Source: Dimorphilus gyrociliatus
Lineage: Eukaryota > Animalia > Annelida
Length of the DNA stretch: 64,000 nt
Assembly: GCA_904063045.1 (NCBI GenBank)
Contig: CAJFCJ010000001.1
Location: 1,116,001 to 1,180,000, forward strand
Direction: 5' to 3'
Positions 45,610-48,514 of this stretch are shown one piece after another; positions within the stretch are counted from its first letter, which is position 1; each line of letters begins with the position of its first letter. The position numbers were made by a program, and so were the translations under genes. The notes under the pieces were generated by a model. That model saw only the letters and a list, made by a program, of their open reading frames with translations, was not told the origin of the DNA and searched no databases.

Positions 45610-45680
45610 TTGCTAAAAATTACATCAAACGTAAGCTCTTCAAGTTTACGCTTACGTCATCATCATAAAAACAGACAGTA
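45610..45680 (-). promoter_or_regulatory. SECIS element in the SELENOO 3'UTR
   Basis: Sense RNA reads A-UGAU-GACGUAAGC-GU-AAA-CUUGAAG-A-GCUUACGUU-UGAU. This gives the UGAN/NGAN quartet, a 9-bp helix II, and AAA 12 nt after AUGA. Confidence 0.88.
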
Positions 45681-45728
45681 TATGTCGATTTTTTAATTTG
45701 AAACAAATGCCATATCTAAAAAAGTTTT

Positions 45729-48514
45729 CTATGAAGATCATGTGACTTTAATTGCAGTAGCCCAAGTTGGCGGTTTATTGCCAAGTTTAGCTACTTCATC
45801 TAGAAGTACAAAAAAAAAGATAAAAACTTTCACATAACGATAAAAATGATAAGATGTCGATTAGACTAAATAACAAACCTTTTACAGAATAATCAGGTGG
45901 GTCAACTGAACTTCTATTGACGCTTTCTTCTTTATTATCTGTTAAAGTTAAACGGTCAATATTCGATTCTAACAAATGATCTTCGAATGGCGTCTCCAAT
46001 AATTTTAGAATGTTATTGGCTGGAATAAAATCGCCCCTTTCCGCCTTTTCAATAACACTTTGAGCAATATAATTCCTCAGAATAAGTCTGTAAAATAGAA
46101 AATAATGTTTTGAAATAAAATATTCAATTTATCTTCCAACTTGGGATTAGCTTTATTCATGATATTTCTTCTTTCTGTATTTAAAGTTTTAATATCTGTA
46201 TTAACTCCTTCAATATCAGCTTCCAGTCTTTTAACATATTGATTTAACCAATCGTTCCATTTATTTTGTTGATATACTTTTAAGGCTTCTTCATCCGAAA
46301 AATCCTGATATTTATATTTATAAAGCTAGATTTAGAAAAAAATTTAATCCTACTTTGATTTCCGCCATCTTTTCTCTGTTCTGAAGTTCTCTTAAGACTA
46401 TATTAGCACCGACTCCTATTCTATTTAATAATTCTGGATTCATTTGAGCCATTTGTACAAACATTTGTAGCTCTCTAGAGAAATAGTTGTAATGCATCTA
46501 TAAATTTTTGATTCTTAAATATTATTAGTTACCTGGTTTCCATTTTTGGAGCAAAGGCTAACTTAAGCTCTTCTAAGGTAGAAGATGCTTCCTTTAGACT
46601 CGTTAATGTTATTTCATGACTTTCTTTAAAGTTTTCAGATGTTGGAAAGTTTAAATTTGATAAACACCTCCAAGTATTTGTAAAATCCGAGCCATTGGCT
46701 TCCATTACGTTATAGAATTCCTTAATCAGCTCCCTAGAGAATACATCATTTCTTAGTTTGAAATTTAGTAGATTTACTTTATAATTTACATGTCTTGCTT
46801 ATCTTGCGCTTCAGTTGCATGTAATATACCCAACTATAAAACAGGAGACAATTAAGAACAAGTTTATAGTCATATTATGATATGTGAATACCTTTTCTCT
46901 CGATCTGCTCAAGTAGGATTTATTATAGTTTACGTCAAAGCACTCCATTATATCTTGTATATCGCTAGATGGGATGAAATCTGTCAAAGCTTCGCACAAT
47001 TTCCCTACGTTCCATTTACAAATTTCTGGCTGTCTTTCATAAGTATATCTACCTCCGCTATCTAAGTTTTAAATCATATTGGATTTTAGAGAGTATATAC
47101 TATGGAAAAAAGAAATAAACCAGAAGCATTGCAAATAAAGTGAGGATCATATCTGTCTAGAAATCCGTAAGGTCCATAATCTATTGTCAATCCTAATATA
47201 CTCATATTATCCGTATTTAATACTCTGGATAAAATTGAAAATGTTAGAAAAAATCACAATTAAAATGAACATCAAACCCATGACAGAAGCCGATACACTG
47301 CCAGGATGCAACCAACTCTGCTGTGCGCTTCGAAATCTCCATAAGAAATTCTCTACACATTTTTTCTTTATTATTGGAGTGAACTTCCCAAATCTTAGAG
47401 AAAATATGATTGTCAATTTAAGCAATAATTCAGTTGACATTTAAAGAAATTATCACCTCTGGGTAATAATGTTTGACGCAGTAATCCAAAAGTGTTACGA
47501 GTGTCTGAGGTTTATTAAAGCTTGGCCCTTTTCTACCAGTCATGCTATCAGTTTGTTTGCAAATTTCAAAAGAACCAAATCTAGTAAGAATTTCAATTTC
47601 ATAAATTAGTAATAAATATATAGATATATATATATATGTAAAAATGTTTTCAATATCTACAAACCTTATAAATGATGGACTAATTCGTAGAACAATACTT
47701 GCTTTTTCCAATTTGGCATTTCCATCATAGAAAATATCTCGTACAACTTTGGTATCGCTCGTGATTATTGTTCCCGCTCTTGTTGTTGGAATTCCCAAGT
47801 AATGCATCGCCTTTAAGAATAAATCAGGCAGACAAAGAACGATTACTTATAGTTACAATGTTATATATCTGTCACCTCGCTTGCAAGAAATTCCCTGATA
47901 CTTGATCTTAATACTTTTCTACCATCGGCTTCTCGTGAATATGGGGTTTTACCCGCTCCTTTTAATTGCATTTCGTATCTTTTGTCCTTATGAACAACTT
48001 CCCCTAATAAATGTTATAACATTATTTCTTTGACTTTAACATTTAAGTGTTTTCTCTATTCACCAAGGTAAATTGCAGCCCCATCTCCTAATTGTCCTGC
48101 AAAATTGCCAAATTGATGGCCACAGTAACAATGGGCATATGTTTCTGATCCATTGAATTTTTTGCAGCCTGAGAGAGTATCTAAAACTATTTTAGACTGT
48201 ACATGTTCCTCATCTAAACCAATCAGTTCCAAAGCAGATTTGGAATATGCAACTATAGTCGGATTGTCAACCGGAGTTGGGTCAACTCTGGAAAAACACG
48301 CACCGGAAACTTGTCTGGTGAAATTATGCTCTTCTTTATCAATTGGTAGTTCGCGAAGACACCTATTGTCGAAATTTAAATTGATTTGTGAAGAACTTGT
48401 ATTATCGCTCATTTTATTGTGCAATACTAGAACTATGGGATTTCTTCGGAAAATAAGATGTTTAATATAAGTTTTGCTTGTAAATTCTAAGCTATTGAAC
48501 AATCTTGATAGCAT
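45729..48514 (-). CDS. SELENOO: Selenoprotein O (pseudokinase AMPylase) with Sec at the third-last codon (TGA 45738-45740), multi-exon
   Basis: [62 protein letters not shown] and C-terminus [20 protein letters not shown]. The N-terminus resembles a mitochondrial presequence. Confidence 0.94.

What the first reader, a model, noticed from the sequence alone, without database searches (positions are those of the whole stretch)
45610..45760. Hidden selenocysteine: SELENOO ends VT-UGA-SS-stop with a textbook SECIS 75 nt downstream
Seen in sequence: the last exon reads …AAA GTC ACA TGA TCT TCA TAG (minus strand; TGA at 45738-45740). The 3'UTR contains AUGAU-GACGUAAGC-GU-AAA-CUUGAAG-A-GCUUACGUU-UGAU (45663-45624). 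Established: vertebrate SELENOO ends in VTUSS, and eukaryotic Sec decoding needs a 3'UTR SECIS with the UGAN/NGAN quartet and an apical AAR about 11-12 nt from AUGA, more than about 50 nt from the UGA. All of these conditions are met. Inference: this is a true selenoprotein that standard ORF calling truncates, and the animal retains Sec machinery despite genome compaction.
Basis: partly seen in the sequence, partly recalled or inferred. Interest (0 to 1): 0.8.

Follow-up and report, generated by a model that had tools for sequence, protein, structure and literature searches.

The report
Selenocysteine SELENOO gene with SECIS
This is an ordinary, expressed animal gene for the mitochondrial enzyme selenoprotein O, whose third-from-last codon, UGA, is almost certainly read as selenocysteine with the help of an RNA hairpin 74 bases downstream; this kind of gene has been known in annelids since 2012.

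Summary
On the minus strand the last exon reads ...ATT AAA GTC ACA TGA TCT TCA TAG (TGA 45740-45738). A hairpin with the SECIS core and an apical AAA lies at 45672-45617, with 74 nt between the UGA and the AUGA.

The gene is a complete 13-exon SelO/SELENOO gene (ATG 48514, 683 codons). Spliced RNA-derived contigs from two studies define every intron.

Evidence that the UGA is selenocysteine:
- The hairpin is the only Rfam SECIS_1 hit in the window. It scores 26.2 bits, below the gathering score of 35.
- It is also the only hit of my structural scan (0.22 expected per window).
- The TGA falls on the column where Cys-type relatives have C in ...VT-CSS.
- Three distant relatives whose gene calls stop at ...VT also read VT-TGA-Ser-Ser-stop in their DNA, with different serine codons.
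- A relative about 95% identical keeps the TGA and has a synonymous serine change after it.
- Transcript contigs run through the hairpin.

Not tested: Sec machinery in this genome, selenium incorporation, and the public annotation of this gene.

Sec-SelO was reported in the annelid Capitella teleta in 2012, so this is a sound annotation fix of low novelty. This scan has noted other selenoprotein genes, and a second SELENOO (...KITUSS), on other DNA of the same genome.

The parts
45729..48514 (-). SELENOO coding region, 13 exons, 683 codons including the UGA and the final TAG. Exons on + coordinates: 48064-48514, 47876-48003, 47665-47810, 47457-47580, 47278-47393, 47121-47224, 46892-47061, 46790-46833, 46533-46733, 46354-46474, 46141-46304, 45879-46087, 45729-45799.
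   Evidence: Junctions come from spliced contigs of runs X2 and X1 and are all GT..AG on the minus strand. Four junctions were shifted by 1 nt, as the tool's 'cut +1' allows. Phases are consistent and every exon is open in its phase. Pfam SelO hits cover profile positions 16-333 of 466.
45738..45740 (-). In-frame TGA, codon 680, read as selenocysteine
   Evidence: Sequence. It aligns with the Cys of ...VT-CSS relatives. It is unchanged in the ~95%-identical X1 contig. The same VT-TGA-Ser-Ser-stop occurs in L001, L003 and L004.
45729..45737 (-). TCT TCA (Ser-Ser) followed by the true stop, TAG
   Evidence: Sequence. X1 carries TCA>TCG, a synonymous change after the UGA.
45617..45672 (-). SECIS element. 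AUGA core 45663-45660; helix 2 of 9 bp (45658-45650 with 45636-45628); 13-nt apical loop with AAA at 45647-45645; 3' UGAU at 45627-45624.
   Evidence: Rfam SECIS_1 at 26.2 bits, the only hit in the window. Only hit of the structural scan. Helix 2 is the minimum-free-energy structure in every fold. The core fits UGAN/KGAW (PMC3753652). It lies inside transcript contigs of X1 and X2.
45492..45497 (-). First AATAAA on the coding strand after the stop; candidate polyadenylation signal, 3' of the SECIS
   Evidence: X1 coverage stops between 45531 and 45381. The actual 3' end was not determined, because contigs cannot show ends.
48515..48535 (-). 5'UTR seen in the transcript contig. An in-frame stop lies immediately upstream of ATG 48514.
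   Evidence: X2 contig 7 reaches 48535. The frame-0 stop before the ATG is shown.

Best explanation
This is a functional nuclear gene for selenoprotein O (SELENOO), a SelO-family protein adenylyltransferase that is probably mitochondrial.

The mRNA is spliced from 13 exons. During translation the UGA at codon 680 is recoded as selenocysteine. This happens because the 3'UTR, 74 nt further on, folds into a SECIS hairpin: a kink-turn core AUGA/UGAU, a 9-bp helix 2, and unpaired AAA in a 13-nt apical loop. That hairpin recruits the SECIS-binding protein and the Sec-specific elongation factor carrying Sec-tRNA. Translation then adds Ser-Ser and stops at UAG, giving a 682-residue protein ending ...IKVT-U-SS. 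Plain ORF and gene callers stop at the UGA and lose the last three residues, including the redox-active Sec.

Shown here: the gene model, expression, family membership, the UGA/Cys correspondence, conservation of UGA-Ser-Ser-stop, and the presence and statistical rarity of the hairpin on the transcript.

Inferred: actual Sec insertion, the machinery, and mitochondrial targeting.
For: - Sequence at the stated coordinates.
- 13 GT..AG introns of 49-84 nt, taken from spliced contigs of two independent studies. X2 is identical to the window and X1 is about 95% identical. Both run through the UGA, Ser-Ser, the stop and the SECIS.
- Consistent phases and open exons.
- Pfam SelO on 7 exons.
- The exon [21 protein letters not shown] aligns to solved SelO/YdiU entries 6iii, 9jym, 6eac and 6k20 at E about 1e-13.
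- The only SECIS_1 hit in 128 kb lies in this 3'UTR on the right strand. It is also the only structural-scan hit, with 0.22 expected per window.
- Relatives end either ...PPxWAxxLxVT-CSS or abruptly at ...VT. The window's [13 protein letters not shown] aligns in register, so the TGA falls on the Cys column.
- DNA of three VT-ending relatives reads ACG TGA TCT TCA TAA, ACC TGA TCC TCG TAA and ACG TGA TCC TCG TAA. Synonymous serine variation after the UGA means that stretch is translated.
- X1 keeps the TGA and has TCA>TCG after it. Listed coding differences are 18 synonymous to 11 non-synonymous.
- X1 has no change in AUGA, helix 2, AAA or UGAU.
- Sec-SelO has been reported in six invertebrates, including the annelid Capitella teleta (PMC3473315).
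Against: - The Rfam SECIS_1 score (26.2) is below the curated gathering score (35).
- Helix 1 is weak and AU-rich, and the fold z-score is modest: -0.9 for 71 nt and -2.1 for 101 nt.
- The 74-nt UGA-SECIS spacing lies inside the 51-111 nt interval in which the minimum functional distance was bracketed for DIO1. Efficient recoding at this distance is therefore not guaranteed.
- tRNA-Sec, SECISBP2, EEFSEC, SEPSECS, PSTK and SEPHS were not looked for in this genome. There is no tRNA in the window and no scan notes on them.
- The absence of changes in the 30 core SECIS positions of X1 is not significant by itself (about 1.5 expected).
- There is no protein-level evidence.
Confidence: 0.9

Rival explanations
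1. The UGA is simply the stop codon. The protein ends ...IKVT, and the downstream hairpin is a chance or relic structure with no function.
For: The SECIS_1 score is below Rfam's gathering threshold. The primary motif alone is at chance level. The spacing lies in the untested 51-111 nt interval. Machinery is not shown.
Against: The hairpin is the only SECIS-like site in 128 kb, and it lies on the right strand 74 nt after this particular UGA. UGA-Ser-Ser-stop is kept in three distant relatives with different Ser codons. Cys forms have C at that column followed by SS. There is a synonymous Ser change after the UGA in X1.
Confidence: 0.05
2. The lineage has lost the Sec machinery. The gene is a recently stranded ex-selenoprotein gene that now yields only the product shortened by three residues.
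For: The Sec machinery was not examined here. Massive selenoprotein loss is known in insects and nematodes (PMC3473315).
Against: The same paper says annelids and molluscs did not undergo such losses. Unchecked notes of this scan list several other UGA/SECIS genes in this genome that follow-up agents judged genuine: PRXL2B/SelU, SELENOL, a deiodinase and a SELENOW-like gene. The UGA and the SECIS core are kept between the window and the ~95% relative.
Confidence: 0.03
3. The locus is a decaying pseudogene or an assembly artefact.
For: None found beyond one odd X2 joint (46132 to 47228, non-canonical, supported on only 21 letters) and two loose ends.
Against: All 13 exons are open in consistent phase. 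Splicing is canonical in two studies. Synonymous changes outnumber non-synonymous ones against X1. The catalytic motifs are intact.
Confidence: 0.01

Closest known systems
Vertebrate SELENOO (selenoprotein O), a mitochondrial AMPylating pseudokinase-fold enzyme ending ...VTUSS
   Same: SelO domain, catalytic-loop motif, C-terminal PPxWA....VT-U-SS with Sec third from the end, and a single SECIS in the 3'UTR. The vertebrate ...VTUSS ending is from my own knowledge; the same pattern is shown here for relatives.
   Different: Much more compact: 13 exons in 2.8 kb with introns of 49-84 nt. The SECIS lies only 74 nt after the UGA. Sequence outside the SelO core is poorly conserved (exons 9-12 give no Pfam hit).
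Sec-containing SelO of invertebrates, including the annelid Capitella teleta (Jiang et al. 2012, PMC3473315)
   Same: Same family and the same use of Sec, in the same phylum. One SelO selenoprotein gene was reported in each of six invertebrates.
   Different: A different species. No paper in the library links the species named in earlier notes with selenoproteins. An unchecked note reports a second SELENOO (...KITUSS) elsewhere in this genome, whereas Capitella was reported with one.
Cys-type SelO homologues (bacterial SelO/YdiU and many eukaryotes), ending ...CSS
   Same: Same fold and catalytic motifs. Same C-terminal tripeptide register.
   Different: They carry Cys (TGY codon) where this gene has UGA, and they need no SECIS.
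Eukaryotic SECIS element (Rfam RF00031 SECIS_1; SECISearch3 definition)
   Same: Core UGAN/KGAW with tandem G.A/A.G, a 9-bp helix 2, unpaired AAA in the apical loop, and location in the 3'UTR.
   Different: Scores 26.2 bits against a gathering score of 35. AU-rich, interrupted helix 1. Open 13-nt apical loop (form 1-like): the mini-helix drawn in the Rfam alignment would enclose a 1-nt loop, so it cannot form.

Membership tests
SelO / SELENOO (Pfam PF02696) | Significant match to the SelO domain profile | tested here: met
   Seven exons each pass the curated cut-off (24.4-60.2 bits against 22.8) and together cover profile positions 16-333 of 466.
SelO / SELENOO (Pfam PF02696) | Catalytic-loop and metal-binding motif (..NTDN....DYGP.GF..) as in solved SelO structures | tested here: met
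   Exon 6, [34 protein letters not shown], aligns over 33 residues to 6iii, 9jym, 6eac and 6k20 at E 1e-13 to 4e-12. The catalytic role of these residues is from my own knowledge.
SelO / SELENOO (Pfam PF02696) | C-terminal redox tripeptide [Cys/Sec]-Ser-Ser preceded by PPxWA....VT | tested here: met
   Alignment A1, with TGA TCT TCA TAG directly after ...IKVT.
SelO / SELENOO (Pfam PF02696) | Mitochondrial targeting presequence | not tested
   The N-terminus [25 protein letters not shown]... looks basic and poor in acidic residues. No predictor was run.
Eukaryotic SECIS element | Core quartet UGAN / KGAW with tandem G.A pairs | tested here: met
   5' A-UGAU (45663-45659) and 3' UGAU (45627-45624). 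Consensus from PMC3753652.
Eukaryotic SECIS element | Helix 2 of suitable length directly above the core, with conserved unpaired adenines in the apical loop | tested here: met
   9 contiguous pairs; AAA begins 12 nt after AUGA in a 13-nt loop.
Eukaryotic SECIS element | Reaches the curated Rfam SECIS_1 gathering score | tested here: not met
   26.2 bits against 35. It is nevertheless the only hit in the window, at about 2e-4 per family. I attribute the shortfall to the AU-rich helix 1 and a seed I recall as vertebrate-biased; this is inference.
Eukaryotic SECIS element | Lies in the 3'UTR of the mature transcript, far enough from the UGA | tested here: inconclusive
   It is on spliced transcript contigs of X1 and X2, and the first AATAAA is downstream of it. 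The 74-nt spacing falls within the 51-111 nt bracket for the minimum functional distance. True 3' ends cannot be seen in contigs.
Eukaryotic SECIS element | Binds SECISBP2 and supports UGA recoding | not testable with these tools
   Needs a reporter or binding assay.
Selenoprotein (UGA = Sec) | The UGA aligns with Cys in homologues | tested here: met
Selenoprotein (UGA = Sec) | Coding conservation continues past the UGA | tested here: met
   Ser-Ser-stop follows the TGA in L001/L002, L003 and L004 with different Ser codons. TCA>TCG in X1. Only two codons are available, so the test is short.
Selenoprotein (UGA = Sec) | Sec machinery (tRNA-Sec, EEFSEC, SECISBP2, SEPSECS, PSTK, SEPHS) present in the organism | not tested
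   Only this window was readable, and it holds no tRNA. The scan's notebook holds nothing on these genes.
Selenoprotein (UGA = Sec) | Selenium in the protein | not testable with these tools
   Needs 75Se labelling or mass spectrometry.

The most novel reading that the evidence does not exclude
Recoding works here with only 74 nt between the UGA and the SECIS core. That is inside the 51-111 nt interval in which the minimum functional distance was bracketed in human cells. It would make this one of the tightest natural UGA-SECIS arrangements and show that genome compaction has pushed a SECIS close to its mechanistic limit. A weak GUGA-core candidate 86 nt after the UGA in the relative L001/L002 hints at the same arrangement. 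In addition, an unchecked note of a second SELENOO (...KITUSS) suggests that this compact genome may keep two Sec-SELENOO paralogues.
Probability: 0.6. Interest if true: 0.3.

Novelty: new member of a known kind. Interest (0 to 1): 0.17.

Why it matters
The main value is as an annotation correction. The true product is 682 residues and ends ...VTUSS. The three residues that ORF callers drop include the only selenocysteine, which is the presumed redox-regulatory residue of the enzyme.

It also adds one data point that a very compact animal genome keeps a costly recoding system. And it provides a natural example of a short (74 nt) UGA-SECIS spacing that could be used to narrow the known lower limit.

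It does not change what is known about SELENOO or about Sec decoding.

Tried and rejected
**Searches that found nothing or were uninformative**
- Rfam at gathering thresholds over the whole window found nothing. The SECIS appears only in the E-value search.
- The bare motif ATGA..AA..TGAT is uninformative: 34 matches against 32.8 expected. I replaced it with a motif-plus-helix scan.
- The other sub-threshold Rfam hits near the site (ceN103, mir-2131, ROSE_3) are chance-level and I dismissed them.
- ARAGORN found no tRNA, and so no tRNA-Sec, in the window.
- SECIS_1 found nothing in the relatives' contigs L001-L004. A relaxed scan of my own gave only a weak GUGA-core candidate in L001/L002, and nothing in L003 or L004, whose contigs end 315 and 176 nt after the TGA.
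- P0130 and P0048 are not on record for DNA look-up.
- The representative search returned no 100% match, so the public gene call for this locus could not be inspected.
- The scan's notebook holds nothing on SECISBP2, tRNA-Sec or selenophosphate synthetase.
- No paper holds both 'Dimorphilus gyrociliatus' and 'selenoprotein'.

- Exons were translated and searched one by one by reference, and codons split across junctions were left untranslated. No full-length search, cluster look-up or structure prediction of the joined product was therefore made.
- The protein was not read through the UGA in any tool.
- The X1 contig has no reference. Its version of the SECIS was produced only inside a script, by applying the listed differences to the window.

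Full report
**Observation**

One search shows on the minus strand ...GCA ATT AAA GTC ACA TGA TCT TCA TAG. The TGA is at 45740-45738 and the TAG at 45731-45729. After 74 further nucleotides comes AUGAU-GACGUAAGC-GU-AAA-CUUGAAG-A-GCUUACGUU-UGAU (45663-45624).

**Is it more than chance?**

The bare sequence motif is not. ATGA(10-13)AA(14-30)TGAT occurs 34 times in the window, against 32.8 expected.

The motif together with its helix is. I scanned for ATGA-N, at least 8 contiguous base pairs, AA 9-13 nt from the core at the start of the loop, and NGA on the 3' side. Exactly one site in both strands of the window passes, and it is this one, with 9 pairs. First-order Markov shuffles of the window give a mean of 0.22 sites.

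Independently, Rfam's SECIS_1 covariance model matches 45672-45617(-) end to end at 26.2 bits. This is its only match in the whole window at E up to 10. The reported E of 0.82 is multiplied over 4227 families, so it is about 2e-4 for SECIS_1 alone in 128 kb. For a single strand of a 3'UTR of about 250 nt it is far smaller.

The score is below the curated gathering score of 35, and no family reaches its gathering score anywhere in the window. The 9-bp helix 2 with a 13-nt apical loop is the minimum-free-energy structure in every context folded. Helix 1 is short, AU-rich and interrupted, and the fold z-scores are modest. The core fits the published consensus UGAN/KGAW (PMC3753652). The mini-helix drawn in the Rfam alignment would close a 1-nt loop, so I read the element as form 1-like, with an open apical loop.

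**The gene**

Pfam SelO (PF02696) matches ORF pieces upstream on the same strand. Two public runs hold the locus:
- X2 (2017) gives contigs identical to the window that skip twelve short stretches.
- X1 (a 2025 marine metatranscriptome) gives contigs about 95% identical. They skip eight of those stretches at the same junctions and a ninth at a donor 5 nt off. X1 does not cover the other three.

Every skipped stretch is CT..AC on the + strand, which is GT..AG on the minus strand, and is 49-84 nt long. These are therefore spliced RNA-derived contigs from two studies.

They define 13 exons. With ATG at 48514, which is immediately preceded by an in-frame stop, the phases are consistent. Every exon is open in its phase. 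The total is 2049 nt, or 683 codons, with the TGA as codon 680, followed by Ser, Ser and TAG.

Exon by exon, seven exons individually pass Pfam's cut-off and cover profile positions 16-333. The exon [21 protein letters not shown]... aligns over 33 residues to the solved SelO/YdiU structures 6iii, 9jym, 6eac and 6k20.

Split codons were left untranslated, and no search was made with a joined product or with a read-through of the UGA.

**Is the UGA a selenocysteine codon?**

There are three lines of comparative evidence.

1. *Alignment with Cys forms.* A search of exon 1 against 1.84 billion representatives returned 1987 relatives. The full-length relatives have two kinds of C-terminus. One kind ends ...PPxWAxxLxVT-CSS or a close variant; these are Cys forms such as P0069, P0053 and P0102. 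The other kind ends abruptly at ...VT (P0079, P0048, P0130, P0137, P0033, P0125). The window's last exon, [13 protein letters not shown], aligns in register with both kinds (alignment A1). The TGA therefore falls on the Cys column and the following Ser-Ser on the SS columns.

2. *DNA of the VT-ending relatives.* I fetched the DNA of three of them. L001/L002 (P0079) reads GTA ACG TGA TCT TCA TAA. L003 (P0137) reads GTC ACC TGA TCC TCG TAA. L004 (P0033) reads GTC ACG TGA TCC TCG TAA. All three are VT-UGA-Ser-Ser-stop with different serine codons. That pattern is expected if the two codons after the UGA are translated. It also shows that gene callers routinely truncate this family at the UGA.

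3. *The close relative X1.* X1 keeps the TGA. It has a synonymous TCA>TCG in the second serine codon after it and a synonymous GCA>GCC four codons before it. Over the listed coding differences there are 18 synonymous and 11 non-synonymous changes. Several of the non-synonymous ones lie in the N-terminal presequence region and in the variable linker of exon 12. Within the SECIS, X1 differs only 5' of the core AUGA (45665, plus an insertion after 45666), at one apical-loop base (45641), and 3' of UGAU (45623 deleted, 45620). No change touches AUGA, helix 2, AAA or UGAU. With about 5% divergence, zero changes in 30 positions is not significant on its own (about 1.5 expected). The edited element still folds into helix 2 plus the 13-nt loop.

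**Is the SECIS on the mRNA?**

X2 contig 6 runs unbroken from 45799 down to 44801 and is joined upstream to exon 12. X1 contig 2 joins exons 11, 12 and 13 and runs down to 45531. Both therefore carry the UGA, the stop and the whole hairpin. The first AATAAA on the coding strand after the stop is at 45497-45492, which is 3' of the hairpin. Contigs cannot show transcript ends, so the exact poly(A) site is unknown.

**Caveats**

- The minimum functional UGA-SECIS distance was bracketed between 51 and 111 nt for DIO1 in human cells (PMC3753652). At 74 nt, this site lies inside that interval and not safely above it.
- The Sec machinery was not examined. Only this window is readable, it has no tRNA gene, and the scan's notebook has nothing on the machinery genes.
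- Unchecked notes report several other UGA/SECIS genes in the same genome that follow-up agents judged genuine: PRXL2B/SelU, SELENOL, a deiodinase and a SELENOW-like gene. I use these only as a lead.
- The same notes name the organism as the miniature annelid Dimorphilus gyrociliatus. The window's short introns agree with the published median of 66 bp (PMC7854359), but I did not verify the species.

**Comparison with what is known**

Sec-containing SelO was reported in one copy in each of six invertebrates, including the annelid Capitella teleta, in 2012. That paper states that annelid and mollusc selenoproteomes did not undergo the losses seen in insects and nematodes (PMC3473315). SELENOO is described as a mitochondrial AMP-transferring pseudokinase-fold enzyme (PMC13134290).

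This locus meets every defining feature of SelO that I could test, and every sequence and structure feature of a SECIS except the Rfam gathering score. It is a new member of a known kind and a sound annotation fix. It is not a discovery.

The only mildly unusual aspects are the short UGA-SECIS spacing and an unchecked note of a second SELENOO (...KITUSS) elsewhere in the genome.

**Verdict**

My confidence that this is a genuine Sec-encoding SELENOO is about 0.9. Novelty is low and interest is about 0.17.

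Noticed in passing
window 44835-45287 (-): A 150-aa ORF lies directly downstream of SELENOO on the same strand. It sits in the same unbroken X2 transcript contig (44801-45799) as the SELENOO last exon. In X1 it is on a separate contig (44984-45381), with a coverage gap at 45382-45530. It is probably a separate, closely packed gene and not part of a long 3'UTR. Pfam gives only a weak NUMOD4 hit (E 0.027), a motif I recall as associated with homing endonucleases.
   Followed up: partly
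window 46132 to 47228, loose ends at 46112 and 47249: One X2 contig shows a 1095-nt skip with non-canonical ends (CT..TG), supported on only 21 letters on one side, plus 255-nt loose ends that match nothing here. This is probably a chimeric assembly. A rare aberrant isoform is not excluded.
   Followed up: no
window 47056/47061 to 47121: The X1 relative uses a joint 5 nt away from X2's, with 5 other letters between. This looks like sequence divergence at the exon 7 boundary rather than a different splice site.
   Followed up: no
L001 3107-3158 (same in L002 2781-2832): In a distant Sec-SelO relative there is a SECIS-like candidate 86 nt after the UGA. It has a GUGA core, a 7-bp helix, AAG at the start of the loop, an inner GGCA/UGCC helix and a 3' UGAU. 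Rfam SECIS_1 does not detect it. A convergent gene ends only about 160 nt after the SelO stop, so that genome is also tightly packed.
   Followed up: partly
window 24782-24845, 27507-27573, 18193-18250: Repeated sub-threshold mir-297 and mir-1277 Rfam matches, on both strands at 24.8 kb. I suspect simple-repeat hairpins rather than microRNA genes, but I did not read the sequence.
   Followed up: no
another piece of the same genome (note s1-082853): An unchecked first-reader note reports another SELENOO ending ...KITUSS. This could be a second Sec-SELENOO paralogue or a haplotig.
   Followed up: no
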